The notes below the pieces were generated by a model. The model saw only the letters and a list, made by a program, of their open reading frames with translations. It was not told where the DNA came from and did no database searches. DNA of 64,000 nucleotides from Polymyxa betae A26-41. Taxonomy: Eukaryota > Protista > Endomyxa: Phytomyxea. Shown piece after piece: positions 15,208-61,841 of this stretch. The stretch covers positions 124,001 through 188,000 of the forward strand of contig RBZT01000673.1 of the NCBI GenBank assembly GCA_003693705.1, given 5' to 3'. Within the stretch, counting starts at the first letter, position 1, and every line of letters begins with the position of its first letter. The translations under genes were made by a program, and so were the position numbers.

Positions 15208-16269
15208 TCAGACGGCTGGATTTCGATGTAGATAAGGAAGGGTGGATACATGAGCTGCCTGCTTCTCAGCTGGTTTACGACCGATATGATTTCCATCAAT
15301 CTGAACAACTCGTGGTGCTGGTAGCTCATCCAAATCTAGATCTCGAGCCCCGGTCGTCTCTAGACATGACGTTCGTCGCTCCATTGAATCGATCACATTT
15401 CGCAATGATGTTCTTGAATGTATCCCCTTGAAATTCGCCATTGATTCATCAATCAACCTTTCAACATGATCGTCTTCATCATCGTCTTCTTTCTTCTCTG
15501 GCACCTCTTGATCTTCGATCAACATGATCGTATTCGGGGCGTTATTGTTTTGGTCAGCGGGAGCTAGACGCCTTGCTCTGACCGCCTCCGTTTCCGATGT
15601 AAAATCACCGCTACGATTGATATCAGCGACTCGTTTCTGGACGCTGCGAACCAGCTGCTGAATTTCGAGATCGTCAATGTATCTGCCGATATCGAGCTCT
15701 TTAGTGAAGCTCAGTAAATCCTCAACCTGAGCTCTGCTAGCTGTCTCTCCTTCCTCTTCTGTCATTGACCACGCCGGCTTTTGCATCTTCTTCAATTCGC
15801 TCAACGGCGCCGTGAACAGTTTCTCGGCCTCGGCTGCCGTTAATTCGTTTTCACCGCCTTTGATGGCTTCGCAGATGCGGCGCCGAACGAACGCAGATCG
15901 TTCCTTGAAGTTTTGAAGCCGGATCTCGTCTGCAGTTTGCTGCCGGCGATGTTCGTCCTCGATTTGTTGGCGTTCATGGCGAAGGTCATCAAGCCAGCGC
16001 CGATGCTTGCGCATGGCCGGCGCCATAGCCGATATACGCTTTCGTTGAAGCATGAAAGCTGGATTTGGTATTGGCGGATATCCAATATGATCATGACAAT
16101 GACCTCCTGTTATAAAAGGAGGAGGATTACTGCCAGGAGGATGACCTCGCCCATGAGGATCCACGATCGACGACGCCGGTCGCAGCGATAGCATCACGCC
16201 TTTGTGTAGCAGCGTCCCGGACGATGTCGGGCGGGTCGGGGGATCGCTGAGCATGACGCCATGACTCAT
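15208..16269 (-). CDS. Uncharacterised coiled-coil protein, 353 aa, intronless
   Basis: Long open ORF with motif-like blocks KPAWSMTEEE, LLSFTKELDIGRYIDDLE and terminal LPYLHRNPAV. Confidence 0.8.
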   Translation of the reverse strand: MSHGVMLSDPPTRPTSSGTLLHKGVMLSLRPASSIVDPHGRGHPPGSNPPPFITGGHCHDHIGYPPIPNPAFMLQRKRISAMAPAMRKHRRWLDDLRHERQQIEDEHRRQQTADEIRLQNFKERSAFVRRRICEAIKGGENELTAAEAEKLFTAPLSELKKMQKPAWSMTEEEGETASRAQVEDLLSFTKELDIGRYIDDLEIQQLVRSVQKRVADINRSGDFTSETEAVRARRLAPADQNNNAPNTIMLIEDQEVPEKKEDDDEDDHVERLIDESMANFKGIHSRTSLRNVIDSMERRTSCLETTGARDLDLDELPAPRVVQIDGNHIGRKPAEKQAAHVSTLPYLHRNPAV

Positions 16270-17586
16270 CGACGATCAAGGTACGCGATGTTAATGGGAT
16301 AAATCTTTGGAACAGATTTCTTCTCTGACAAATGATGCCTTTGGAGGCGTTGCGGGATGCTGCTGATGGGATTGTGTGAATTTAACTCAAAAGATCGCTG
16401 ATGCTGTAAGTATCGATAAAGATCTGCTGAACACAATTACTGAAGAACTGAGAAAACGAGGTCTGAGAATACTGCAGGAAACCATCGAAGAATTGTTACT
16501 GATCAGAAACAGATTCCATTTTAGAAACAATTTCACTCATAAGGAAGCCATAGCAGGAGATCCCAAATATGGAGATATTCGCCCCATGTAGATATGATTC
16601 GACAAGCTGATAATTTGATAAGAAAAGAACAGAACTGACAGAAATTTTTGAAAACCAGCAGTATAGAGTATGTTTTGCAGGTTAAATGAAGACAGCCCGA
16701 ACCCGACCTAGTCGTTGAGCATTATCTGATCCTAAACCATGAAATCAGATCATGAATATTCATGACCAGAACCCTACTTGCAAAGCGGACGTCGTAAAGC
16801 CAGGACAGATGATGAAAATATGCTGATATATCATTGAGTGATATAACACCAACAGACCTGAATAACAGAGCTGGTTATGATACTCTCACATATCAGCACT
16901 GTCAGCAACAGCTATGTAGAATTTATTATTGCAGGGCGCTCCAAGGACATGGTCGTTCCCAATATCGTCTGATTCAGGGACTGTAGAACTGGCGTCTATT
17001 CCGTTCAAGCAGGCAATGAAACGAGACTGAGCAACACGTCAATCAGCAGCTCGACGCAGGTCTACAGGGCCAGGAGAGCACGACGTTAATCGGAGCTCTT
17101 CAAGAGTACATCTCACCAGTCTTACAATCAGATCGAGCTTGTTTCGAAGCGCATTGGAGACTTCGAATCGGTTACGATATTGAGCGAGCGTGCCCCAACC
17201 GATTCCTGTCCATCTTCTCGTGTATATCGACCATAAAATTCGGCCTGAGCGGACGCCGGTTCATCTATCAATGTTCAATGCCTCGCTGGATTAGTCTACA
17301 AATCAACCAGGTCCTATCTAAAAAGACATGGAGTGATCCCGGGGCGAATGCAACCAATTCCTGGTCACGATCTCGCGTCTACATTGCAGAATCGCATCTC
17401 TCATCACCCATCATTGTGTATTATAAAAAAGGAGTTCAATCCTATCACATAACAACGTTTTCATTTCGAGAGTAAATTTGATCTGAAAAAGTGGAATTGA
17501 TGTGACGGGAGGTGTGGATGATGAGCTGGTTGATTTATTTATATTAGGGGATCTCCCTATATGTTCTATTGAATTAATGGACGCCC

Positions 17587-18702
17587 TCAGGCACTAATAC
17601 GCTCCTGTTTCAGAGGAGCGATCCCCGTCTCCTGAATCAGAGCCAGCAGAGCGTCATGATCGTCGACATTCGGTGGCGTCTCCGGCGGCGTCATATCATC
17701 TATCGCCAATGACGTCTGACTGATTGTCGTGATCGAGGACGTCGTCGATGATACCTGATGTATATGGGCCTGATCTATAGCTCAGCGAACGCCATCTCAT
17801 CAACCATCAATCGTACCATATGACGAATTAATCTGCCTGGCGTTGTGAATGATTTCATACATATTCGGCAGTCCATTGGCCCAAGCTGTTTCTCAGCAGG
17901 AATATACGCTGTACCATGTATACTCGTCATATGGCGGTTCAGACGACCTGCCGTTGTAAACGTCTTCATGCAGATGGCGCATTGGAGCGGTACACGATCA
18001 TGAACCAGACCATGGATCTTGAGCTTGCTCCGACAGATGAACGACTTCCCGCATGTCTCACATTGAAACGGACGTGAACCTGAATGTACTCGTTCATGGG
18101 TCGTCAGCTAATACATTGGTCAGCTCCATTAACAAACATCGAGTCCATTAGATGCCATACGGTGTGTTTCTGCCATAACACAAGTCAGCGAATGGGGGCC
18201 AGTACAACCCGGGTTTTGTTAGAACAGATCCCACCTGGGTGAATGCTTTGCCACAGATCTGACATTGGAATGGTCGATGACCGGTATGCGTCAGCAGATG
18301 CGATTTCAGATTGCCTTTCGTGGACGATGATTTCCCTGCGACGATTGATGGTTGGCGATATGTTGGATGACGACCTTTAGATTGCTTACCGCAGATAGGA
18401 CACATATGACGTGTATCAGGGCTGTGGATACGCTCATGGACTCGAACTGATCCTTTCTGGCTGAACTGCTTGCCGCAGATCGAGCAGCGGTATTCGGTCG
18501 GGTTCTCGTGACGCGCCTGATGATTCAGGAAGTTGGCTTTGTGTGTGAATTGACGCGAACAGATCGAGCATGAATACGGTTTCGTGCCGAGCTGTGATGA
18601 ATGATCGACGGCGGGTGACTCGGGACCCTGAATCGATGCGAAATGTGCTAATGTCATCATGCCTGAGGCGATGTCGTCCTCGACCACATCAATTCCGTTC
18701 AT
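17587..18702 (-). CDS. C2H2 zinc-finger transcription factor (multi-exon)
   Basis: Repeated CxxC...HxxxH fingers with HTGHRPFQC and HSGSRPFQC linkers. The last exon ends ...LKQERISA* at 17587. Confidence 0.9.
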
Positions 18703-19005
18703 GAAATCGACAATTTACGAAAAGGAATTGTTCAAACTCACGATCTCGACATGGACAATGGAAATGGCCCGGCTGAATCCAACTAAATCGAGATTCTTTT
18801 TTGCGATCCAATTTGGTACGAGAACATGGCCTGAATAAGGAATTTAAATTCTAGAATCCCCAAGACCGGGTTTATCTCGACAATATCTTCAGTTTCCGAT
18901 CTGGAACCCTCTCGATCGTATCTAACTATGACATTTTGGGACACCCTCAAACAATAACGTACAATGTTTTATACAGAGAACTTGGGTGAATGCGACCTTT
19001 TCCGT

Positions 19006-20840
19006 TTAATTTTCATAGGCAGAACAGCTCCTTTGCAGAGCATCCTCGGATGAAAATACTGGCGTGTTCGACAGATCATCTTCATCGTTTAAGGTCAAGC
19101 ATCCAATGATGAATTCGCGATAATCAATCATAGAGCTGCCGTTAGCATCAAATGATAAAAATACCCGATTTGCAAATTCTGCATCCTAAACAACCATCAA
19201 AACAGATTACAAAACGAGCTGGTCCCCTAAACGCACAATTGTGGGATTGAGCTTCACCACAAACTTGTCGAATTCTTCTCGATCGATGAGCCGATCACCT
19301 CTACATGTACATTAGACCCCTATGCAATTTATAGCGTAACCTAGCTAATACTTGAAATCGATTCGGTCAAAATCTTCAACGAGCCGTTTGATCTGTTCAA
19401 GCTTCACCTTGAATCGTTCTTTGAGCTCATAAATTGAAACACCAATCTCAACGCCTTCGCCCTACATGAAAATTTTAGATTCATAACTCAGAGCTCGTTG
19501 TCAAAGAACGAACACGTCGCAGTAGCCAATTATCGACAATCGAATCTTCGGCTCCGTATGGAACAATTGGAACATTTAATGCCTGGGCCATCGTCTGGCA
19601 ATACCTTCCATTCAGAAACTGGCAGCTAACCACAACCTAACCCGTCCATACCTTTCGAACATTTTCGGCATAGCGTTCTGGATTGGCCAGCTCACCTTTG
19701 GATGGTCGGCGTACCGGAAGGAAGATTATCTCAGCGCGTTGGAATGGCTGTCAGACACAAATTTCTGTATGATATCACAATAACGGCAGTAACAGTCATA
19801 CCTGACAAAGCATCTCTGTTATGGCGATCCAAAGAGGAGGGCTGTGATTTGTCCAGCAAGGATCTGAATGTTGCCACGGGAACCTATAAAACGACGACGA
19901 TGCATCAGATGGTCCAGTACGCCCATTGCCGCCCTCCGTACTTGATGAGAACCGGTTGAACCGGGTATCCAGTGGAGAAGGCGCCTTTCTTGAACCGCAG
20001 CAGCGTTCTGCTGTTGGATGTGGTGCCCTCCGGAAAGATCATGATCGGAGGGAATCCGCCGTGATGAGCTCGTTTTCTGTAAAAAAACGTCACAAACCAT
20101 GAATCGCACGTCTTATCAAAAAATGTCGGAATCAGGAATTCGAATGAGCTCAAACTGACCCGATCTCGCTAAGGACGTCTGCTCTGCCTTCAACGCTCAT
20201 GCGATCCACGAAAATGAACTGCAAAGCTTTACAAATGCGACCGACAATCGGCACATCTTCGGTAGACTTTAGTCAGAATCAGCCAAAGAGATAATCGAAC
20301 AGGTTGCTGAGTCAGAAACCTTTTTAGCCACAGCAATGGAAGGAAATTGAGACAATAGCAGAAATGCATCCAGAATGGTAATATGATTCGCCACGACAAT
20401 TCGAGCTGATTTATCGAGTTCTCCTCGGGTCTTGATCTTCCAAATACCGAAACATAACAACACAATCCGACTGAAGAATGAGCAACTTATATCCAGGACT
20501 CTAACCCAAATCATATAACATAAGCTTGGAGAAGAATTAGCATCCGGTAGAAGACCTACGTTCGTCTCCATCCAGTCATTGGTTCAATAACTCCATCTTT
20601 ATCGTAAACGGGCTTCCGACCAATCGTGATCAGCTCCAGAATAAGCCATTGCAGTATAAAGCACACAATTACGATGACGAACCGAACGATGGGAATAAGC
20701 AAAAGAGAGGCGATCAGCACCTTGAAGCAAATACAATCTCAGTATAACAAAATTGATAGGGACAGATCTCAATCAACCTTAACAAATTCCCTTCTCGAAT
20801 TCAGAAACGTCTCCCCGCTATATGTGAACGGTCGTGGCAT
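19006..20840 (-). CDS. Lysophospholipid acyltransferase (LPCAT/LPEAT-like) with C-terminal EF-hands
   Basis: IVVANHITILD (HxxxxD), IFPEGTTSN, FKKGAF..GYPVQPV, an N-terminal TM segment and an EF-hand-like FDANGSSMIDYREF. The start is approximate. Confidence 0.88.
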
Positions 20841-21512
20841 GCAATAATCATAGGCGTCCGAGTCCCCTATTGGCCATTAAAATCAGATCTGGACGCGATT
20901 GGTCGGCCAAGGTTCTGGCTGCCCGTACCGACCAAAGCCGATGACCTTCGCCTTAGACGCTGATTAATGTCTGTCATTTACAGACTGACAGACACAGTTT
21001 TGATACGTAGTAACACTGGCATGCACTGACTTCTGTTTTCTGACGATTTTTTTCACTGACAAAGTCGAGTTTTTCGATCAAATTGCGTACTGTCCAATCT
21101 AAGTCAGAGTGCGAACTTGATCGTAATCATCCACGTTAATCTAAAACGTGCTCCAGCTGCGTTTGACTGCTTCTAAATAATACGTTCGTATTAGAGTCGA
21201 CGCCGTCCGATGACCGAAAATGGAAGATCAGATGTGAATATACCCAGAATAGAATGTCTGCTTCAATCGCTAACCTAATAGCATGACTACTAGAAGCTGC
21301 TGCCAGAATATTGACTTCATAACGATCTCTATCTTTAGTATTGGTTTGATCCTTCTTCTCGTCGTCGTGGCCAGGGTAATGCTATCTTATGCATTCTTCA
21401 GACGCTGCTAAGGTGTGTGGAATGTGGATGATCCCAGCGATCAGGTTCATTCGACAAGCTGGTGATGTCATCATTGACTGCCCGGGCCCTCAACTTATCA
21501 AAAATTTCTGAA

Positions 21513-21680
21513 ACGGAGCAAGAATGGCTACAGATTGCAGAAAACTTTAATAAGATTGCATTTTTTCCCTGGGCGCTGCTTTGCAGTAGATGGGAGTCTT
21601 ATTGCTGTCGAAAGACCATCTAAGTACGAAGGGTGGTACTGTCGTAAGGGGTATTCCTGCAATCAATGCCCTCGTCATGT
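21513..21680 (+). mobile_element. Degenerate PIF/Harbinger DDE transposase fragment
   Basis: Across two frameshifts it reads TEQEWLQIAENFNKIA-FP / FAVDGSLIAVERPSKYEGWYCRKGY / PAINALVM, matching the Harbinger/HARBI1 region 'GA(I/V)DG..I...P.....Y.RK.Y.(S/A).N'. Confidence 0.7.
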
Positions 21681-22953
21681 CTGGAGTACTCCTTCGTCTT
21701 CCATCTGATTAAGGAAAATAATAGGAAACCGGAAAAAGAATATAAACACAGAATCAGTTGGTATGTAGCTTTTTAGAATATGATATACCAGATTAGAAAT
21801 AGTCTTATTGACAGACATGAAGCATTTAACAATGAATAATATTAATAAATATTAATACCACTAAATTATTACGTTCTTGTCTGCATGTTAATACCGGTAG
21901 CGGAACTTGCGAGACATCGCAAGACTTGCAAATTATGCAATCCGCAACGCAAATGATGTTTTCGACGGAAATGTGTAGGGCTGCGCCTGAAATACAGGTA
22001 AGGATTTGCGCGCGAAGATTCAAAGAAGGAAGGTATTATCAGGTAGCACCATAAATGACACAAATAAAATGAGACAGCAATTGTGGCTGCGGCGACGGAA
22101 ACGGTTGCTTTTGCTTCTCCGACCAAGTTTCTGAATAAGGGAAAAACTACCTGTGGAGTGATTTCTGATTATTACAAAAAATTACAGAAATGGCAATCAA
22201 TGACCGAAATTCTTTGAGATTCTTGATAAGGGATGAACGCGTTCGACTTTACGACAATGTAATGTTCTTAATGCGCGGATACTCGAAGTTCAACTGCGCC
22301 TTCTGCCAGGCAGGCTGTGAGTCATCGACCAATCCTATTCGCATCATAGAGTTCAAGTTAACAGTAATCGTTGTCTATTGAAAAATCTGGATTATTGCAT
22401 CTACTCCTTATTATAAGAAGTCATTTTCTTATGACAGGCTTAACAACTCTTGGGTTGCGTTGTCTTTTTGTTTTCAAACCACTTACCGTCAATCTTTCTG
22501 TTGAGATGAGAATCGAGCAGACAGACATTTGTACATTCCGATGATAAACCCTGGACTCCATTAACTTCAAACGAAGTGAACGAATTTGTATCCCAATGAT
22601 GCAATATTTGTTTTTCAGATTGCATACGATGAGGAAACTTAAATCGGGTTCATGGACGTTCAGGCAGCTCATGAAGCGCACTAAAAGCGAATTACACAAG
22701 ACATGGTGTTCGTAATGGCTGAGATAACACGTGTTTGATCACAATCGGTTTTATGGTTAAAATAGCTCAAACAGAGGAGCCCAATCAATGTTCAATGCAG
22801 TTACGAGATTGATCAGAAATATATTCAGATACGGATGTTGACTCATTCGAAAAGATTTCATCCCCTTTGGAATGTCATCAAAGTGAGTCAATGGATTGCC
22901 CGCCCTCGGTTCATCCTCATTCCCTATTTTGAATTCAAGAAGAAAAGACAATA

Positions 22954-23460
22954 ATGTCGATCGAACTATTCCTTACTATCACAATTCTTTCATTAGCACA
23001 TGCTGATTTTGCTGAACAACCAGACAGTGCCATCATAGTGAGCGGTACCTCATTAATACCAGGCGATAGCCGCTTCAGCAAGTCCCAACAATACAAGCTA
23101 ACGTTTGATGGAGATATTCATTTGATGCAATGGAGTGTTGATGCATATTATCCTGAAGGCTGGTATGGGACCTACGTCTGGAGTATCTGCAGTAATCAGA
23201 CCGGAGCGACATTCAGCATGAGATACGATGGCAATCTGGTCTTAGAAGATGCTTATGGAACCCTGTTATGGTCTCATGATCAGAACAAAGATGGATCAAC
23301 ATCAACTCCGTATTATGCTATGGTTGGCGATGGAGGGAATCTGGTTGAGTTCACTTACAGTGGAATCATGATCTGGAACAGCTCGAACCCCGATACACAA
23401 AATAGTGGTACGAGCCTCGCCAAGTTGAAATATGGGGATTGCTTATCTGTCAATTGGTAA
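22954..23460 (+). CDS. Secreted bulb-type (B-type, GNA-like) lectin, 168 aa
   Basis: Signal peptide; FSMRYDGNLVLE..G.LLWS and MVGDGGNLV...IWNS repeats; paralog at 51487-52038. Confidence 0.8.
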   Translation: MSIELFLTITILSLAHADFAEQPDSAIIVSGTSLIPGDSRFSKSQQYKLTFDGDIHLMQWSVDAYYPEGWYGTYVWSICSNQTGATFSMRYDGNLVLEDAYGTLLWSHDQNKDGSTSTPYYAMVGDGGNLVEFTYSGIMIWNSSNPDTQNSGTSLAKLKYGDCLSVNW

Positions 23461-45808: not shown

Positions 45809-48259
45809 ATGTTCTATCCAAGGCTCTTGTTGTTATGTTCTGTATTCATCATAATCTTGGTATCATGGTCGCAAGCATTGTCGTGTCGTACCTGCTCGCA
45901 GCAGGCGACCGGACCCCAAACTGATGCCTTGATTGTTGCTCATTTCACAGATTGGAAGCATTATCTAATGGTGCCTCTTGGCGGATTGATATCGATTATC
46001 AATGGATCTCTTTATACACATCTGGTTATGGGTGTGTCTTCTGTATCAAATGGTCTCTGCATAATTGCTGATGGCTGGGCTTCCCTACAACTATCATTTA
46101 CAAGCACATCATTGGGATCTGATGTCAATGACCCATACAAAGGGAACCTGAACCAAGCTCGACGTTTGAAACTCGCCTATCCACACTTGAAAACAATCCT
46201 GGAGGTGACCTCGTCTGGAGGTTTCAGTACAGCAGCTGCTGATTCGGCAAATCGAGCGAAGCTGGCCACATCGTGTGTTAGTTTGATGCAGCAATACAAT
46301 CTTGATGGTATTCAGATCAATTGGGGTATGTAACTACCATTAACATCTTTGTTATGCTCTTAATAGTATATTATAGCCAATCCTGGAACATCAGATTATA
46401 ACAATTTTGCACTGTTGGTTGCATCATTTCGATCTGCGATTCAGACCTCAACGTATCCAAATGCGACATTATCAATATCAGCAAACTTCGATCCTGCAAG
46501 ATGGAAGTCTGAGTACAATATCGCGGCCATGGCTCCGTATTTGGACTGGATAAATGTCAGATCGTTTTGGTATTGGGGTGGATCTAATTCTATAGTTGGT
46601 CATACAGCCAATCTATTCCCAGCTGGTCCATCATCACCACATTCTCGTTCTGTTGCTCAGGATCTGCAATCTGTCCTCGACCTACCAATGTCTTCGTGTA
46701 AATTACTTATGGGAATTCCGTCATTCGGATCAGTATGGAAGCTTCCATCGGCGCCGGCGTCTCTGACATTGCCCAGCTTTTATGCTGTTGGCGCAAGCAC
46801 TGGCTTAGAAGGCGGTGCTGAATTCTCAAGTTATCTAGACTTTGATGTTCAAAGGTTATTATCGAATGGGACATGGACGACCATTTGGGATTCAACAGCT
46901 CAAGCTTCTGTTTATTACAACCCATCATTACTCAATTTCATCACATACGATTCTGCAGAGTCACTGAATGCAAAGATGCAATGGGTACTGGACAATAACC
47001 TGGCAGGAGTTTCAATTGAAGACGTAACTGGTGATCTCAGATATAACAGGATCTCATCAACAGCTGTTAAGAAGTTCGAGTCATCTCGACCCTATCCCAA
47101 ATCAAGAAGCTCAACGAAGAAGTTTCTAATCACCAGCTCACAACAGCTATTTAGTGTATCCAAACAGGGCCCTATCTCGACATCATCCAGATCACAAAGC
47201 CAAACATCAACAACAAATTCACCGTCTTCAACGATTTCGTCCATTCAGAAGACGGCAAAAACGTCGTCATCATCCCAGAGCAGTTCAATGAACATATTGT
47301 CGAGCCATTCAAGTTCAGCCAGTTCTGGATCGTCTAAATCAATGCCAAGTCCTGTTGTAGCAACACCCTCTATCGTGGGATTTTCTGCAATCGCCCTCAG
47401 GTCTACAAGCACGCGATTGGCGCCGGTCTCCCCCTCGCAGAGCTCAGGCAGCAGATCACGTTCCAGATTTCCTACGATGTAAGTGTATTGGTTACGAGGT
47501 CGTGTAGAATATCAATCTCTCAACAGAACTGATACCTCTATTGGCACCTCATTCAACGCTTGGATGGTCTCCTTGGCCATTCTTTGTGATACTCGACAGT
47601 ACACCGATGATAGACGTCAATTGGAAGATGCCTATTTACGTAGTGCCCTTTCGAAGTCGCTGAATGTCGACCAGACTCAATTCGTAAATGCACAGCTTGT
47701 TTCAAGTACTCAGGCGACAACGTCAGTCTCGTTTTTGGTGCTGCCGAGATCGTCATTGGGCGTTCCTGAAGGCGATGAAATCTCTGCACTGTTCACATCA
47801 CAGATGCAAGAAACGTCGAGCTTCTTGAGGCAGAATTCTATTCTTGGTTTTGCGTTGTCACCGCCGACTCCAATATCAGTATCGCAGGTGTCTGTTCGTC
47901 GTTGCGGTCAAGATTCCTACATAATAATTAGATCTAACAGCGACAAATGCCCTACAAACACGCTCGCAACACAATCAACAAGTTCAAAAGTCACAATCAT
48001 TGGTGTCGCTGGTGGAATTGCTTTCTTAGGGGTCTTGGGCGTAGGCCTTTGGCTATATCGAAAACCAAGGTTGATGGGCCTCGAACAGCCTGCCAACGTT
48101 GTATATTTCAACGGAATGACCCAAGAAGATCCTGATGGCCATCCGTTGTCGCTCAAAGATGGTGCTGTTATTCTGGGACCTTTCACGACCAGCTCTTATG
48201 GTAGTAGTGACCAGGCATTCACGAGCTACAGCATAGTTCAAAGGACGAATACTTTGTAA
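45809..48259 (+). CDS. Single-pass membrane protein with catalytically degenerate GH18 (chi-lectin-like) ectodomain, Ser/Thr-rich stalk and TM helix
   Basis: Signal peptide; GH18 hallmarks (YTHL, KGNLNQARRLKLAYPHLK, YLDWINV, KLLMGIP, WDSTAQAS, ITYDSAESLNAKMQW..NLAG). The active site reads DGIQINWA. Introns 46326-46376 and 47479-47526; TM VTIIGVAGGIAFLGVLGVGLWLY-RK. Confidence 0.88.
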
Positions 48260-49122: not shown

Positions 49123-51456
49123 ATGAAAGCCGCTCTTCTATTCCTAACTCTTCTATTCCACCAAGCCCAATCGTTATCATGTCGAACTTGTGCCCGGGAC
49201 ACAACTGGACCTAGAACTGATGCGTTGATCATCGGTCAATATATTGATTGGAAATACTATACATTAGAGAGCTATGGAGCTGTCATATCTAATATTAATG
49301 CGTCTATATATACGCATATAGTGATGACTGTATCATCAGTATCTAATAAGTCATGTATCATATCAGATAGATGGATCTCATTACAGAACTCCTTTACTAG
49401 TACAACATTAGGCTCAGATACCAATGATCCATATAAAGGTATCCTGAATCAAGTTCGGAAATTGAAGCTGCTCTATCCACATCTGAAAGTGGTTCTGGGG
49501 ATGACTGATGCCCCTCCATCCACCAAGCTATCTGTAGTCGCAGCCGATTCCACTTTCCGAACTCAACTCGCCCAATCCTGTGTTAATATGATGCTGCAGT
49601 ATGGTCTGGATGGCATTCAGATCGATTGGGGTCAGTTTCTATGATCGTTTTGACTGATACCATTATCATCTAAGTACTTATTTCATAGCTAAGCCAAATC
49701 CAACCGGTTCGACTCTAGCCGATCCTAATAATTATATTCTATTAGCGGCCGCTTTTCGTTCAGCGATAGCCAGCTCGACCAAACCGACGGCAACACTGTC
49801 TATTAGTGCAATATTCGATCCTTGGACAATGAACCAACATTTCAATTTGACAGGAATAGCTCCATATTTAGACTGGATTAATGTTAGACCATTTTGGTAT
49901 TGGGGCGGTTCAGATTCTGTCATTGGTCATACTGCTAACTTAGCTTCACCTGGCTCATCATCACCACATTCTCGTTATGGAGCACAAGATATACAGACCG
50001 TTATCAGTAAATCTGTACCATCATGCAAGATAATCATGGCTATACCAGCCTTTGGATTTGCATGGCAGCTGCCATCAGCACCATCATCGCTGTCACTTGC
50101 GAATTTCTACAAAGTTGGGACATCTACAGCGATATTTGACGGCTCCGAGAATGGACGGTACATTGATGTTGATATCCTGCCTCTGACAAAGGCGGGATCA
50201 AACGTCACGACTGTTTGGGACTCTACAGCTCAAGCCTCGGTTTATTACCAGGCTTCATCCCGTTTACTGTTTACTTATGAGTCGACACAATCTGTTAATG
50301 CCAAGATGCAATATGTTGTCGATAATAATCTCGCTGGAATCCTTGTCGATGATATGGGATGTGACATGAATTGGAATCTGATCGCAACAGCTGCTTTCAA
50401 TAAGTTTCGGTCACTACGACCTTGCGTAGCAACCAGCAAAAATCTGACTACCAGAAGATCATCTCTGGGTGTGTCAAGCAATACGAGAATTAATTCGGCG
50501 TCGTACCAATGGAGGTATCCGTCAATGGTAATAACAGTCGTTGATTTTTCTCTGCATTGATTGAAGCCTTGTTTGCAGCCGATCACTAATCCGTCGACCT
50601 ATGCAAGCTCAGCGTCAGCAGATTCGTATGTATACTGTAATAGCCATGTCTAATTTGGTCTTCTGAGGTTTCATGTAGATCGGCGAATGGAACACAAATT
50701 GACATGCCATTCTGGGCAGCCATGGTATCACTGCCCTTGCAACGAAGTCTGACAAAATATTCATCGGATAGGAAGCACACTGAGCTTCAATTCTTCATTG
50801 CTGATGCATCCAACGCTCTGTCAATCGATTCTAATCAGATTGTTGATTGTGTGTTGATGGCGAATGGACCGTCTGCAAGCATATTATCATTTACATTGCT
50901 GCCTGGCTCACACACAGCTCTGGATACAGCAAATGAATTCTTCAATCAGATGCAAGATTCTAGTAGCAGGCTACGCCAAGGAGCGTTGCTACAATTTGCC
51001 CCAGAGCCTCCCTTTGTCATCTCAATCACCTCTGTTCGAGTACGTCGTTGTTCCGGCAACATGATTATATCAGCGAGCTCTCAATGTTCCGATTTGAGTT
51101 CTGAGAATAACCAATCACACTTCTTTATGATGCAAACCACGTCGATAATCGCATCAGTATGTGGCTTGATGTTAGTATTAGCTTTGCTGCTGTGGATTTG
51201 TGTTTATAAGAAAAAGAGTCATCTACGTAATGTTAAAGGGCAACACCAGCAAGAGACTCCAGTTGGAAAAGAAGTTGCTGTTGGGCCGACAGCAGTTCCA
51301 GAGCCTGTACAAAATCTGGTATCGTTCTTCCATCAAGGACCTCTTGATAGCCCTACACCTATGCTAGATGTAGCTAGTTATTACTCGTCAGATGACGCAT
51401 GGCATCAGCAACAACAGCAACAGCAACGACACTATCGACCTGGTCAAACATTATAA
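49123..51456 (+). CDS. Tandem paralog: single-pass membrane protein with degenerate GH18 ectodomain
   Basis: Closely similar to 45809-48259 (SCRTC..TGP.TDALI; YLDWINVR.FWYWGGS; GHTANL). The active site reads DGIQIDWA. Intron 49631-49688; TM IIASVCGLMLVLALLLWICVY-KKK. Confidence 0.88.
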
Positions 51457-51486: not shown

Positions 51487-52038
51487 TTATGTAGACAACA
51501 AACTGCTACTACAATCACCATATTGGAAGCAGGCCCCTTTGCTACTGCCAGAGTTCTGGTCGGTACCATTAACAGTGGACCAGATCAGGTCACCGTTACT
51601 CGATGTGTTGTAGTATGAGTATTCGTTCAACTGAGCGGAATCGTCCAAACTGACCAGATATGGACCATAGTGTGTGCTGCCCGAGCTTACGTCGTTAACA
51701 GGATTCGACCACAACAGAACTCCAAGTTTTGATCGCATTTGCAGGTTGCCCGCTTGGTTCAGCGTCAATGTTTCGCCAAGCTGGTCGCCCGTTGGGCAAA
51801 TCGCCCATAGAACCGTCTCATACATTCCAGTTGGATGCTGTTCGTCGGACGTCCATTGAAGCAATTTGACAGCTCCATCGCGAAACACGAGTTTGAAATC
51901 CTGCTTGGGGCTGTACAGGCAGGCATCGCCATCGTTTGTCAATGTGAATCCAACTGGTATCACACTTGATTGTGTGGAATCGCCATGGACCATAACACCA
52001 AAGGCAAATAGTAGGAGCGTCGTCAATGTTCTTACCAT
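51487..52038 (-). CDS. Secreted bulb-type lectin-like protein, 183 aa
   Basis: Signal peptide; LYSPKQDFKLVF, LNQAGNLQM...LLWS, LIWST and YGDC; paralog of 22954-23460. Confidence 0.8.
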   Translation of the reverse strand: MVRTLTTLLLFAFGVMVHGDSTQSSVIPVGFTLTNDGDACLYSPKQDFKLVFRDGAVKLLQWTSDEQHPTGMYETVLWAICPTGDQLGETLTLNQAGNLQMRSKLGVLLWSNPVNDVSSGSTHYGPYLVSLDDSAQLNEYSYYNTSSNGDLIWSTVNGTDQNSGSSKGACFQYGDCSSSLLST

Positions 52039-56365: not shown

Positions 56366-56583
56366 GACCCGATGTCGTCCATTGCCAGAGATAACTTTCG
56401 TAGGCTCTTGAACAGTATCGCTTTAGAGCAATCGTAATGCTTCACAGAAGTATAACAAGGTATCATTATCATCTTCATTCTCAGATTTTGTCAATCCTTG
56501 CACATTGTAAAGAAGTCTACTGGTTATCCTGGATAGAACGATCGATGGTACGTAATTACTGGATAAGGTCGAGTTTATGGAGA

Positions 56584-56647
56584 GAGTTACTGAACCATTG
56601 CCATGTATTTTAGCCCTATGAGTTACTGAAATGAATTTTAGCCCTAT
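56584..56647 (+). repeat. Imperfect tandem duplication spanning the start codon of the GH18-7TM gene
   Basis: GAGTTACTGAA(ccattgcc)ATGTATTTTAGCCCTAT followed by GAGTTACTGAA-ATGAATTTTAGCCCTAT. Confidence 0.8.
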
Positions 56648-59600
56648 CTTCTACATTGTTGTCGTTCTTTGCATTGACAAATGTAAAGCTTATTTACCAT
56701 GCCAGTCATGCACAGTGTCAGGGCCAAAGACGTCTTCGCGTTTAATTGGTTACTACTATAGAACCAAGGTCGATGCTCTTCCAATTGAGTCGATCGATGC
56801 TGGATCGTTGACGCACCTGGTTTGGAATGGATTCACCGTCGCGAATGGCCGTTGCGAGATTTCTAATCTGAATACTGATTTACAACAAACGTATGGCTCG
56901 AATTCGCTGGGTATTGATGTTGATGCCGCATATCATGGTCAACTATATCAGCTTCGCTTACTAAAGCTCAAATATCCTCACTTAAGCTTGCTCGTCACGA
57001 TCCCTGGAATTTTTCAGACTACCGGTGTTTCCAGTCTAAATACAAGAGCCTCCTTGGTATCCTCATGTGCTGCTTTGGCTCGGCAGTACCTTTTCGATGG
57101 CGTCGAATTCGATTGGGGTAAGCCAGAATTGAGGCCTCGCCATCACTGATTGTATACCCAGTCATCACCACCGACGGCGATAAGTTCGAGTTTGCTCAAC
57201 TGTTGTCGGCCTTCAAGCAAGCAAACGCAAACCTGACTGTCGTCTCTCAGATCAGGGGCCCTTTAGCGACTATGTATTCACGTTATGATTTCACTACCAT
57301 CTCTGCCAGTGTCGACTGGGTCCATTTCTCTGCATTTAATTTATGGGAGTCAAGTCTAAGACCAGGTTAGTGGAGTCCAGTCGGTGATGTTACCCCGCAT
57401 TAAATAACCAATTGTAGGTCATCACTCGCCTCTCTACTGGTCTCCTTACTCTCCAGTATACGACTCGGTTGACTCCTGGGTCCGGTATTTGCTAAAGAAT
57501 GGAGTTCCACCTTGTAAGATTGTGCTGGGACTATCGTTGTCGGGGCCCGCCTGGTCGTTGACGGATTCGGTTTCACCGACCAGCCCAGATGCCATCTTGG
57601 CGATATTCAATCAAAGCAGGGCCATGGTTTACAGTGGCAGGTTTGCCGGCGGTTACCGGCTCCGTTTTAGAGACGTTAGCCATTCCTTCAGCTTGGTTTT
57701 TGATGCCGCTTGTCAGACCTCAGGCTACCTGAGTTCTCAAACGTTTGCATCTGTGGAGGGGATTCAAGCCATGCAAATTAAGGCCAGATATGCATCGCAT
57801 CAGAATTTGGGCGGCATCTATTTGCATGATCTCAGTGCTGATATCCCTTCAAACGGAATTGTTCAGGCGGTTCGGTCAGCGCTTGTTCCGCTGACGCCAT
57901 GCAAGAATTTGATCGCAAACACTCAATCATTGTCAACGCCTACGAATTCAGTTAAAAGCTCTACTGCCACGATTAATACCAAAGTTGTCACTTATCTTAC
58001 TATGAACAATATCGATCATGTTGAGGGAAATCAGTTCACTCATGCTATTTACGACCAGTTGAATTGGACCAGTATCTCGATGGATACGCGATCGTCCATG
58101 ATCGATCTTAACCTTCGCCGCATTGCTACGTTCAGAAAAAAATACCCCCAAGTCTGTTTATTGCTACAAGTTGGCAACAACATCGAGTTTTCCAAAGTCG
58201 TTGGGAATAATGCAACGAGGATGGCTCTTGTATCAGCCATTATCGCCAACGTCAACTATTTTGAATTCAATGGCGTATCTGTAAACTGGGGTATGAAGTG
58301 CAAATGCTGCTTAAGGATTATTAACGGGGTTTGTAGATGATACGTCCGGACAGATTAGCAACAAGTTTCACCTTGCTACGTTTATGTCTCAGCTGCAGTT
58401 GCGGCTGAGCTCAGATTCTGCTTTAACAATGGAACTGAAATTCCGGACAGAATCGTTCGATGTCCGTTATAACTTGACTCTCGTCGATTCTTTCGTCGAT
58501 TGGTATCATGTACGACCTTTTGATTTCGGGTTTGTTGGATAGAGATTCTTGTGATCAAGTCTGAATCCGATTTAGATTGCAGGTAGCAGTTCCGTTCACA
58601 TTCTCTTCGTGGTATTTGCCTGACACTGGCGCTAATTTCTTTGACAAAGTTTTGGTGCTATCGGCTTTAAACAGGATACTAATTGAACCCATTTTACCAT
58701 CCAAAATTGTTTTGGTCCTGCCAATGTTCGGGCTTCAGCTAATTTCCACGTACATGGACACATGGATGTATCTCGCTTGGTATTATCCAGCCATACTACA
58801 ATCGTCCGTAATTCCTAGTGCAAACGTCATCAAGGCAGCAAATACGGCCGGTTGGGTCCAGTTAGCTGATCCAGTCCCTAATGTTACTTTGCTTTATCAA
58901 CAATCTTTGGCACAAATGATTCTCTACGATGGCATTGGAAACATCATCACCAAAGTCGATCAGGCCAAGACTTGGGGTTTAGCGGGAGTTGGGTTTTATG
59001 ACGTGTCGACTAATGATGCTCGAGTAGCAACTGCAATAGCAAGGTTACCAAAAAACGACATAACCCCCATATCATCATCACCTCGACCTGTTCTGACGTC
59101 CGCAACATCTGTTCAACCGAGCTTTTCGTCTCAAGACTCGTTAATGCCCCTTGGCGTCTGTAATCAAATTTCTATCAGCAAATTAGTGCAATGGAATATC
59201 GCGGATTTTCCGATCATGCTCCAATCAGTTATCCCAGACCCAAGTGTTCTACTTACATCTGGTTGGACTTCACCGAAACTTGATCTCTCGTCTGCTTCTT
59301 TCGTATTAAACTCTCCCGCTGACCTTGATCTGGTTTTATCATCACGATCGCTAAAGGAAAACTATGCTGGTCAACGACTATTCTTCTTTCTAAACCTTTC
59401 GTGCTCTGATCCTAACCATTCCAGACCTACTAATGTTATCATTCCAACGTCGTTGGCAATTCCGCCTCGCACACCAACCCCTGAAGGTTTGACAATCACA
59501 CCAAATACTGGCGAAGCGCTTCTCACTGTTTTCAATCTTGAAGTAAGTGGCGATTATCATCAATCGGCATGCGCGCGATACTTTGTTTATCTCGGCAACG

Positions 59601-61841
59601 CTCAGGTCCCACTTGGTGATGGGAACTGCATTCCGACATTTTTCTCTCTCAAAACCGTGTTACCAGCTTCAGATAATAGTTCGGTTGTTATAGTCGCTGT
59701 CGAAGTTGTTGATAATGGCGTTGTTTCGGAAGGACTGGCGAATGTCACTGTTCAGATTTCAGCTCCGGAAATTTCTTTAAATTACATCGAAGACATATTT
59801 ACACCCAACTCTAGAATACCTTTTTGCGATCACGTTTTGTCCACAGTATCCATAATCAGCCGTCTTTCAGTCAACACAACAACGGTACGAGCAAGAATAA
59901 TGGAGATGATAAAAACGCAGTATCTTGAAGCACCTGCATGCCCACCGGCTAGTTATCAAGATCTTGCTTTTATAACTGTCACATCAGAGCTCTTGAAGGT
60001 AATCATGTTTGTCATCTGCTTCAGCTCGACTTATTAATCTGTAGGATCCGACTGATCTCAATAATGGTATCGCCCAGGATGCATTAGATGTGATCAACAA
60101 GGCGATGAATAAGACTGATGTCATGCAGCATCGTCTTTTGCGGGAAAGAATTGCTATTTTATTATCGTCCTTGTTGTTATCTAAAGCGTCAAGTGGGACT
60201 TTATCTTACATGCAGTCGATTCGAAACATTATCGATCGCTTGGCAGTGAGCGGTCTCAGTAATTTAGCGGGTGGGGAACGCGATTCGTGTCGTCGCTCAA
60301 TTAGCACCGATGCTTTCAATATCCAAACATACAAGCTACATGCACTTGGTCTAAATTCTGCTCCTTCGTGCTCTGTTACGCTGCCTCTGGATTTAGTTAC
60401 CCGATATCGAGGCAGAACAGTTGGTGTAGTCTCAACAATTTATCAGCTTGTTTCGGGGTTACCGTCTACGACCAATCTCGTCCATTCTGTTAATGTATAT
60501 ATCGATAACAGTGGACCGGCTACCATTCAGAATGCAAGCTCGCCATTTAAAATCAATATGGGATTAATGCCGTCGTCTGGCGTTCGTTTGGAGTGTGGCT
60601 GGATTCTGCCCAATGGGCGCGATATATCGAAGACAGGATGTGAAACCCAAATCGCTGAAAATCGTATCGTTACATGTAACTGCTATCATCTAACCGATTT
60701 CGTTTTGATAATCACTGAAAGTGAGAGTATTACTTTCGTTAGCTCCAATACCAAAGATGTGCAATCCTGGGCGTTTTCACTGGCGAATCTATTTAATCTC
60801 GCTCTTTCGGTTGTTTCTTTATTTTTAGGATGTTTCGGAAAGTACGTCATAACAAATGCCGAATCATATAAGACTTTCTCGATTATGGCAATCCTTATTG
60901 TGGTAAAGTGTGTCGCTCGAGCTGCATTCTATGGTACGATACTGTTTGGAGGTATCAGACCCAATGGCGACCTCTTTCTTGCTAGATTGATGTTTGGCAC
61001 AATCACCCAATTCTCACAATTTATGATTTTCGGTTATCTGCTATGCCTCCTCATTATCATTCTATCATCTATCGTAACAATGAACGAGAAACCCCTGGCG
61101 CTTCGTAATTTCCTCTTCTTATTTCAGTCTGTCATCAAGGTTCTTATTGTAACATCGCTTGGGGTTCCTGCATTACTGATTTACGGGTCGGTTCGTTTTG
61201 ACAGCCAAGGAATGTTTTTTGCCGCATCTGCTTACATTCTTATATTAAATATACTACTGACTTTATCTATTCCTGCCACCGGAATCATCATCGCGCGATA
61301 TCTGGTAAATCATTCACACAAGAGAGTTATTTCAAACAACTTTGCTATTAAGAGGTCTGGTATTCAGTCACTTTGTCGAATGGAAGCATTAAACGAAAAA
61401 ATTAGGTATTTAAAACTGGCGAAGTTTATGCGAATAATTACAATTGCGATGGGCATCTGTTTATCATTACAGGCAGGACTCTGGACATGGTCAATTGTTG
61501 GTTTAGAATCATATAATAAGAACACTAACGGCAGTCTGGCCTTCGTTGTTTTGGATACGGTTGCTACTTGTCTTGTTCTGACCTATCAATGTAATGTGGC
61601 CTGGACACAATACTGCAAAAAGAAACGAGAAGAGTCTCTTATCGAGAAGAACGTCGCTGCTCACTTCCGTGATGACGCCGTTCGTGTTGTCAACGAGCAG
61701 TTCGTATACGTGGAATCAAAGCGAATCAAGGAACCCTCTGTTTGGGACAATGTCTTTGATGAGTTTGCTAATGGACTTGGTTCTAAACATATGTCGTTCG
61801 ATAATGATTATTCAAGCGATGATGGCAGTAGGCCTTGGTGA
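56631..61841 (+). CDS. Adhesion-GPCR/polycystin-like receptor: signal peptide, 2x degenerate GH18, REJ-like, GAIN/GPS, 7TM
   Basis: ORFs 56631, 57489, 58577 and 60090 join through short introns (57118-57161, 57366-57417, 58291-58336, ~58530-58582, ~59999-60044). GPS reads CGW...TGCET....VTCNCYHLTDF (60594-60701), followed by seven hydrophobic segments. Confidence 0.85.

What the first reader, a model, noticed from the sequence alone, without database searches (positions are those of the whole stretch)
56631..61841. Candidate chitin-sensing adhesion-GPCR-like receptor: 2x pseudo-chitinase + REJ + GAIN/GPS + 7TM
Seen: one spliced gene encodes a signal peptide and two GH18 domains whose DxxDxDxE motif is broken (FDGVEFDWV; FNGVSVNWD). 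These are followed by a REJ-like segment (PP..P.GLTITPNTGEALLTVFNLEVSG), a helical region, a GPS motif C-x-W...GC...C-x-C-x-H-L|T-D-F with an intact HL|T consensus, and seven TM helices with a cytoplasmic tail. Established: GAIN/GPS autoproteolysis is typical of adhesion GPCRs and polycystin-1, and Glu-less GH18 proteins act as chi-lectins. Inference: this receptor couples chitin or chito-oligomer binding (own cyst wall, or fungal/host glycans) to signalling through a tethered-agonist-like peptide (TDFVLII). I do not know of this domain fusion being described.
Basis: partly seen in the sequence, partly recalled or inferred. Interest (0 to 1): 0.93.

Follow-up and report, generated by a model that had tools for sequence, protein, structure and literature searches.

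The report
Protist self-cleaving receptor with dead chitinases
A sugar-beet root parasite (a protist unrelated to animals) makes a surface receptor built like animal adhesion GPCRs, with a self-cleaving GAIN domain in front of a seven-helix signalling unit and two inactivated chitinase domains at its tip, although this layout was thought to have arisen only in animals and their closest relatives.

Summary
Observation confirmed, with one correction. The window is Polymyxa betae (Rhizaria). One 5006-nt spliced contig spans the whole gene and removes six introns. Architecture: signal peptide, two GH18 domains without the catalytic Glu, REJ, GAIN with intact HL|T, GPCR-fold 7TM, tail. Spongospora has a colinear full-length orthologue (CRZ05295). 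Plasmodiophora keeps the halves in two unlinked genes: LRR-REJ-GAIN-7TM-SH3 and 2xGH18-single-TM, so the sensor tip was swapped. Two parts of the interpretation weaken. (1) Chitin binding is unsupported: the groove residues that chi-lectins keep (Trp99, Tyr206/Asp207, Trp352 equivalents) are mostly lost. (2) The 7TM fails the adhesion-GPCR (7tm_2) test, so it works like an aGPCR but is not filed as one. The larger point: a 2025 survey places the GAIN-7TM module in stem holozoans; here a GAIN plus GPCR-fold receptor with exchangeable ectodomains is conserved in three rhizarian genera, probably by convergent assembly. Cleavage, ligand and G-protein coupling are untested. The scan noted this same stretch in an overlapping window, not on other DNA.

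The parts
56631..61841 (+). Whole gene, 7 exons (56631-57117, 57162-57365, 57418-58290, 58337-58529, 58576-59998, 60045-61354, 61406-61841), 1641 aa, single copy in the genome
56631..56690 (+). Probable signal peptide (aa 1-20), followed by a CxxC motif shared with the orthologues and neighbouring pseudo-chitinases
   Evidence: sequence; same layout in P0003 and P0019; no signal-peptide predictor run
56739..57870 (+). GH18 domain 1, catalytically dead: FDGVEFDWV (Glu to Val, motif split by intron 1); beta-8 Trp replaced by His (57825-57827)
57975..59027 (+). GH18 domain 2, dead and strongly diverged: FNGVSVNWD (split by intron 3); beta-8 Trp replaced by Tyr (58997-58999); long branch of 2.4-4.0 changes per site
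59054..59170 (+). Short Ser/Pro/Thr-rich linker (longer in Spongospora); likely fusion junction
   Evidence: sequence; junction is inference
59174..59762 (+). REJ-type Ig-like segment
   Evidence: PF02010 in orthologues: P0003 E 3.4e-6, 26.4 bits; P0006 E 6.3e-6; exon 5 aligns to both
59765..60715 (+). GAIN domain: helical subdomain A (spans intron 5) and beta subdomain B
   Evidence: orthologue model matches BAI2/BAI3/latrophilin GAIN, Foldseek E 2.3e-9, VIA Z 15.5; window model best hit CD97, E 1.2e-7
60594..60713 (+). GPS motif with four Cys; H-L|T at 60687-60695 (predicted cut after L1276); CxCxHLTDF invariant in four plasmodiophorid sequences
60744..61617 (+). Seven-helix domain of GPCR fold, class unassigned, no TM3-ECL2 disulfide; intron 6 lies in the third intracellular loop
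61355..61405 (+).
61620..61838 (+). Cytoplasmic tail with a short W-containing helix shared with the orthologues; lacks the C-terminal SH3 found in Plasmodiophora and Spongospora

Best explanation
A plasmodiophorid cell-surface receptor that works like an adhesion GPCR but was assembled independently. Shown: one transcript; dead GH18 x2 + REJ + GAIN fold + conserved HL|T + GPCR-fold 7TM; conserved in Spongospora; same chassis with an LRR tip in Plasmodiophora. Inferred: the GAIN domain cuts itself at L1276|T1277 during maturation. The two pseudo-chitinases on the REJ stalk then act as a non-hydrolysing anchor to an insoluble extracellular partner. That partner may be the parasite's own chitin/chitosan wall or the host root surface; chitin specifically is about 30% likely, and another glycan or a protein is at least as likely. 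Load or binding on the anchor loosens the N-terminal fragment, and the new N-terminus (TDFVLII, about 20 residues before TM1) activates the 7TM and a heterotrimeric G protein, for instance during zoospore attachment, encystment or spore germination. The GH18 pair came from a single-pass pseudo-chitinase gene (like PBRA_008583) that replaced an earlier tip.
For: One contig across all exons. All 7 exons align colinearly to S. subterranea CRZ05295 at 24-42% identity. GAIN fold. GPCR fold, Z 15-19 over about 240 residues; nearest predicted structures are adhesion GPCRs. CxCxHLTDF is invariant while overall identity is about 25-30%. GPS-to-TM1 spacing is like that of a mussel latrophilin-like receptor. 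Many G-alpha loci in the genome. Split parents in P. brassicae; domain 1 of the three genera groups together (89/92 and 81/90).
Against: No experiment on cleavage, ligand or coupling. The 7TM matches no Pfam family and no PDB GPCR by sequence, so G-protein coupling rests on fold alone, and some GPCR-fold proteins (GPR137/TOM1; own knowledge) may not couple. Groove residues are lost. Models are modest (mean pLDDT 61.5 and 63). The GAIN model used an alignment that included animal GAIN sequences, which can bias it. The second GPS Trp is replaced (Ile/Leu) in Polymyxa and Spongospora.
Confidence: 0.55

Rival explanations
1. Chitin-oligomer chemosensor: the GH18 domains are chi-lectins that bind GlcNAc oligomers in the canonical groove and trigger signalling.
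For: GH18 ancestry. Plasmodiophorid resting spores contain chitin and a lineage-specific GH18 group is expressed at spore formation and germination (PMC4471660). A Trp-rich loop after beta-6 is kept in the Spongospora and Plasmodiophora domains. Tobacco CHRK1 is a precedent for a Glu-less GH18 receptor ectodomain (PMC10573068).
Against: The beta-8 Trp is absent in all 8 domains aligned. The SxGGW Trp survives only in Plasmodiophora domain 1. MxYD is degraded. Polymyxa domain 2 is on a very long branch. Chi-lectins keep an intact site (PMC12042104).
Confidence: 0.25
2. G-protein-independent receptor or scaffold: the 7TM belongs to the GPR137/TOM1-like class and signals through the conserved tail helix and (in relatives) SH3, with GAIN serving maturation and trafficking as in polycystin-1.
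For: REJ directly before GAIN is the polycystin-1 layout, and a polycystin-like REJ-GAIN gene exists in the same genome. TM2 Arg and the TM3 QF.IF pattern recall GPR137/TOM1 (memory only). An unrelated contig has REJ-GPS-TOM1-like 7TM. SH3 is present in two relatives.
Against: No PF06454 match; profile score against the TOM1-like contig is no better than shuffles; Polymyxa lost the SH3.
Confidence: 0.15
3. Release device: GAIN cleavage mainly sheds the pseudo-chitinase fragment as a soluble wall-masking or inhibitor-decoy protein; signalling is secondary.
For: Microbial GAIN-like (MAIN) domains release glycoside-hydrolase and lectin modules (10.64898/2026.05.12.724683); the genome has several other membrane-tethered pseudo-chitinases.
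Against: The 7TM is conserved across three genera and with a different tip; a single TM would do for shedding.
Confidence: 0.08
4. A true but very diverged adhesion GPCR, inherited from LECA or transferred from a holozoan.
For: Top Foldseek hit CD97 across GAIN and 7TM; Atlas neighbours carry 7tm_2 and GPS, scores 0.83-0.85, leads only.
Against: No PF00002 match in any of 4 members; hhalign probability 0.3%; score below shuffles; no TM3-ECL2 Cys pair; for the 7TM alone class A receptors rank first and no aGPCR is in the top 50.
Confidence: 0.15
5. Artefact: two adjacent genes joined by the reader, or an active chitinase.
For: Neighbouring genes are stand-alone GH18 membrane proteins; P. brassicae has the halves apart; Spongospora domain 2 keeps the Glu.
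Against: Single spliced contig and one open frame; independent full-length Spongospora protein; both Polymyxa domains lack the Glu.
Confidence: 0.02

Closest known systems
Adhesion GPCRs (class B2: CD97/ADGRE5, latrophilins, BAI)
   Same: Modular ectodomain, GAIN with HL|T, similar spacer to TM1, GPCR-fold 7TM, TxFxhh strand
   Different: 7TM not 7tm_2, no TM3-ECL2 disulfide, REJ stalk and GH18 tip; Rhizaria, whereas GAIN-7TM linkage and complex ectodomains are described as holozoan (PMC12716839)
Polycystin-1 / suREJ family
   Same: REJ immediately before GAIN/GPS
   Different: Seven helices of GPCR fold rather than 11 TM with PLAT and a channel-like unit; no PLAT match
S. subterranea CRZ05295.1 (A0A0H5QTU0)
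   Same: Full-length orthologue, same domain order
   Different: Annotated only as 'GH18 domain-containing protein'; longer Ser/Thr linker, C-terminal SH3-like region, Glu kept in domain 2 but both Asp lost
P. brassicae SPQ98477.1 (PBRA_008355) and CEP01641.1 (PBRA_008583)
   Same: The first has the REJ-GAIN-7TM chassis, the second the tandem Glu-less GH18 pair
   Different: Two unlinked genes; the chassis carries LRRs and SH3, the GH18 pair sits on one TM helix
Tobacco CHRK1
   Same: Glu-less GH18 used as receptor ectodomain
   Different: Single pass with a kinase; no GAIN, no 7TM
Chi-lectins (CHI3L1/YKL-40, YKL-39)
   Same: GH18 fold, broken DxxDxDxE
   Different: They keep the Trp-lined groove and are secreted; here the groove residues are mostly replaced

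Membership tests
Adhesion GPCR | GAIN fold (subdomains A and B) next to the membrane domain | tested here: met
   Spongospora orthologue model: E 2.3e-9 to BAI2, Z 15.5 to BAI3; window model hits CD97
Adhesion GPCR | GPS with H-L|T/S consensus and Cys pairs | tested here: met
   PF01825 below cut-off (19.3 of 22.5 bits)
Adhesion GPCR | 7TM of the secretin/adhesion class (PF00002), TM3-ECL2 disulfide | tested here: not met
Adhesion GPCR | Autoproteolysis and tethered-agonist activation of G proteins | not testable with these tools
   needs expression and signalling assays
GPCR fold superfamily | Seven-helix bundle superposing on solved GPCRs | tested here: met
   Z 15-19, rmsd 3.2-5 A, about 240 aligned
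GPR137/TOM1 (PF06454) | Profile match of the 7TM | tested here: not met
   the profile had only 4 sequences, so remote kinship is not excluded
Polycystin-1 family | REJ before GAIN | tested here: met
Polycystin-1 family | 11 TM, PLAT domain, PKD channel region | tested here: not met
   7 helices, no such Pfam match
GH18 | PF00704 domain | tested here: met
   exon by exon; exons 1 and 3 over the cut-off
Active GH18 chitinase | DxxDxDxE with catalytic Glu | tested here: not met
   Val and Asp at the Glu position
Chi-lectin | Intact Trp99 / Tyr206-Asp207 / Trp352 groove | tested here: not met
   against PMC12042104
Chi-lectin | Measured chito-oligomer binding | not testable with these tools
   needs a binding assay

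The most novel reading that the evidence does not exclude
Plasmodiophorids independently invented an adhesion-GPCR-like mechanism: a self-cleaving GAIN domain gates a non-7tm_2 GPCR through a tethered peptide, with swappable tips, and in Polymyxa and Spongospora the tip is a pseudo-chitinase pair that reads wall glycan to time attachment, encystment or germination.
Probability: 0.3. Interest if true: 0.92.

Novelty: new variant of a known kind. Interest (0 to 1): 0.8.

Why it matters
The current account (PMC12716839) puts the GAIN-7TM module and complex receptor ectodomains in holozoans. A conserved, expressed GAIN + GPCR-fold receptor in Rhizaria, with an unrelated 7TM and exchanged tips, makes a clean test of whether tethered-agonist gating is a portable property of GAIN that evolved more than once. 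It is also a single-copy candidate surface sensor in soil-borne crop parasites and virus vectors (rhizomania, powdery scab, clubroot), whose cues for germination and root attachment are poorly known.

Tried and rejected
Two-gene artefact: rejected. Active chitinase: rejected on motifs. 7tm_2 and TOM1/GPR137 assignment: no support (the PF00002 genome scan had no positive control). Paralogues of the 7TM in the genome: none. SH3 remnant 3' of the stop: none. Synteny with either P. brassicae locus: none beyond the GH18 domains. Metagenome scans found no more loci. Raw metatranscriptome X6 held no reads, so no expression level or stage. No paper with the accessions or the architecture; the 2019 P. 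brassicae GPCR survey was not held, so its member may be listed there as a predicted GPCR. P0018 was useless as an outgroup (no intact motif).
Full report
Organism. The window is G000:C459:124001-188000 of a 27,085,814-bp, 1001-contig assembly. This matches the Polymyxa betae draft (1,001 contigs, 27,085,946 bp, GC 45.1%; PMC6328671), and the closest relatives found are Spongospora and Plasmodiophora proteins. P. betae is a plasmodiophorid (Rhizaria) root parasite and virus vector.

Gene model. Five GT-AG introns of 44-52 nt, none a multiple of three, join ATG 56631 to the stop at 61841 in one frame. Contigs from three public runs in two studies lack these introns. One 5006-nt contig covers 56597-61887 without a mismatch, from the first GH18 exon to the stop. 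The runs are not labelled RNA, but contigs that lack exactly the GT-AG introns are cDNA-like, and the genome holds one copy. A contig alone does not prove one transcript, but the frame is continuous and an independent species encodes the same fusion. No expression level or life stage could be obtained.

Domains. Pfam finds GH18 in exons 1, 3 (two stretches) and weakly 5, and GPS below its cut-off in exon 6. The best solved relatives of the GH18 parts are tandem-domain bacterial chitinases (5gzu, 5gzt). REJ passes the cut-off in the orthologues, and exon 5 aligns to that region. I therefore folded the Spongospora equivalent: six helices followed by a beta sandwich (mean pLDDT 63). It matched BAI2, BAI3, CELSR1, latrophilin and GPR126 GAIN domains (E 2.3e-9; Z 14-15.5 against about 9 for unrelated helical bundles). 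That alignment included animal GAIN sequences, a possible bias. The window's own exon 6-7 frame (with 17 intron-derived residues left in a loop), folded with family members only, gave seven helices at pLDDT mostly 70-90. Its best Foldseek hit was CD97 over GAIN and 7TM (E 1.2e-7), and the helices superpose on many GPCRs at Z 15-19.

Relatives. A search of 1.84 billion representatives gave S. subterranea CRZ05295.1 (1846 aa, E 1e-39). All seven exons align to it in order: signal peptide, two GH18, Ser/Thr linker, REJ, GAIN, HLTDF, 7TM, and an SH3-like end. A 1.3-kb metagenome contig encodes GAIN-B to TM7 at 54-74% identity, with a gap at the intron 6 position. P. brassicae has the same chassis with LRRs at the tip and SH3 at the end (SPQ98477.1). 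It also has, elsewhere, a tandem Glu-less GH18 pair on a single TM helix (PBRA_008583, 38% identical to the Spongospora pair). In exon-wise trees domain 1 of the three genera groups together with moderate support (89/92, 81/90), so the tandem pair predates their split. The P. betae genome has no LRR version. The simplest reading is that the GH18 pair replaced an LRR tip in a Polymyxa-Spongospora ancestor. That these two genera are closer to each other than to Plasmodiophora is my own knowledge and was not tested, and fission in Plasmodiophora is not excluded. A more distant 1077-aa protein of unknown origin shares GPS and this 7TM (P0005).

Are the GH18 domains chi-lectins? Both lack the catalytic Glu. 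Human chi-lectins keep affinity through an intact site that uses Trp99, Tyr206, Asp207 and Trp352 (PMC12042104). Aligned to bacterial chitinase, the beta-8 Trp is His in domain 1 and Tyr in domain 2, and is absent from all eight plasmodiophorid domains compared. The SxGGW Trp survives only in Plasmodiophora domain 1. MxYD reads SAFN and RPFD. Polymyxa domain 2 is shortened and on a long branch. Canonical chito-oligomer binding is therefore not supported. A remodelled glycan site or a protein-binding role is as plausible. In favour of a wall ligand, resting spores contain chitin and a plasmodiophorid GH18 group is expressed at spore formation and germination (PMC4471660).

Is it an adhesion GPCR? 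GAIN and HL|T are met. CxCxHLTDF is invariant in four plasmodiophorid sequences despite about 25-30% identity overall, which argues for selection on the site. The 7TM test fails: no Pfam family in any member, no PDB sequence match to the profile, no signal against 7tm_2 or TOM1-like sequences above shuffles, and no TM3-ECL2 Cys pair. Atlas neighbours (7tm_2, Frizzled, TOM1, 0.80-0.85) are leads only. REJ before GAIN is the polycystin-1 layout, and a polycystin-like REJ-GAIN gene exists in this genome, a possible source of the stalk. I file it as working like an aGPCR, not as a member.

Mechanism. Shown: architecture, transcript, conservation, tip exchange, and many G-alpha loci in the genome. 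Inferred: self-cleavage at L1276|T1277; anchoring of the N-terminal fragment to an insoluble extracellular partner; activation through the exposed strand about 20 residues before TM1; G-protein output (0.55 overall). TDFVLII is not itself evidence of agonism, since single-pass GAIN kinases have HLTSF and HLTNF. Rivals, which overlap in part: chito-oligomer sensing in the strict sense (0.25), G-protein-independent signalling (0.15), a diverged true aGPCR (0.15), shedding (0.08), artefact (0.02).

Novelty. PMC12716839 concludes that GAIN and the aGPCR 7TM were first linked in stem holozoans and that complex ectodomains are absent from non-holozoan aGPCRs. This receptor does not contradict the literal claim, because its 7TM is not 7tm_2, but it shows the same design in Rhizaria. 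A second contig from an unidentified eukaryote (L030) has REJ, GPS and TOM1-like 7TM pieces not detectably related to this one, so GAIN may have been joined to 7TM domains several times. That raises the general interest and lowers the uniqueness of this case. I found no paper describing the GH18-GAIN-7TM fusion or these accessions; one relevant P. brassicae GPCR survey was not available. Closest precedent for the tip: tobacco CHRK1. Verdict: real, expressed, conserved, a new variant of a known kind; interest 0.8.

Noticed in passing
window 45809-48259 and 49123-51456 (+): Two more Glu-less GH18 genes, each with a Ser/Thr linker, a shared ~130-aa module without a Pfam match (35% identical, SEA-like by eye) and one TM helix. 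Same intron position in the catalytic strand as the receptor, but they group with another contig's gene (C991), not with the receptor domains.
   Followed up: partly
L031 (G000:C892, about 15300-23000, - strand): Polycystin-1-like gene: Thr/Lys-rich stalk, REJ (E 5.5e-22), helical GAIN region, an EGF module just before a GPS reading HA|TDF, then TM segments.
   Followed up: partly
L030:512-5280 (Logan SRR3507923): Unidentified eukaryote: REJ + GPS (HLTEF) + TOM1-like 7TM pieces + SAM-like tail; a second GAIN-7TM assembly not detectably related to this family.
   Followed up: partly
P0004, P0007 (Planoprotostelium fungivorum): LRR + GAIN/GPS + single TM + kinase receptors in an amoebozoan.
   Followed up: no
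window 56545-56630: Four upstream ATGs (3-22 codons) and an imperfect ~36-nt tandem duplication of the start region lie within or near the transcribed leader; two uORFs stop one base before the main ATG.
   Followed up: no
L003, L006, L008 (G000 C720, C1, C991): Other P. betae GH18 genes also have non-canonical catalytic strands (DGVDIEYE, DGVDIEYG, DGINLDWG).
   Followed up: no
window 51487-52038 (-): Intronless secreted 183-aa protein that resembles a bulb-type lectin by eye; no Pfam support.
   Followed up: no
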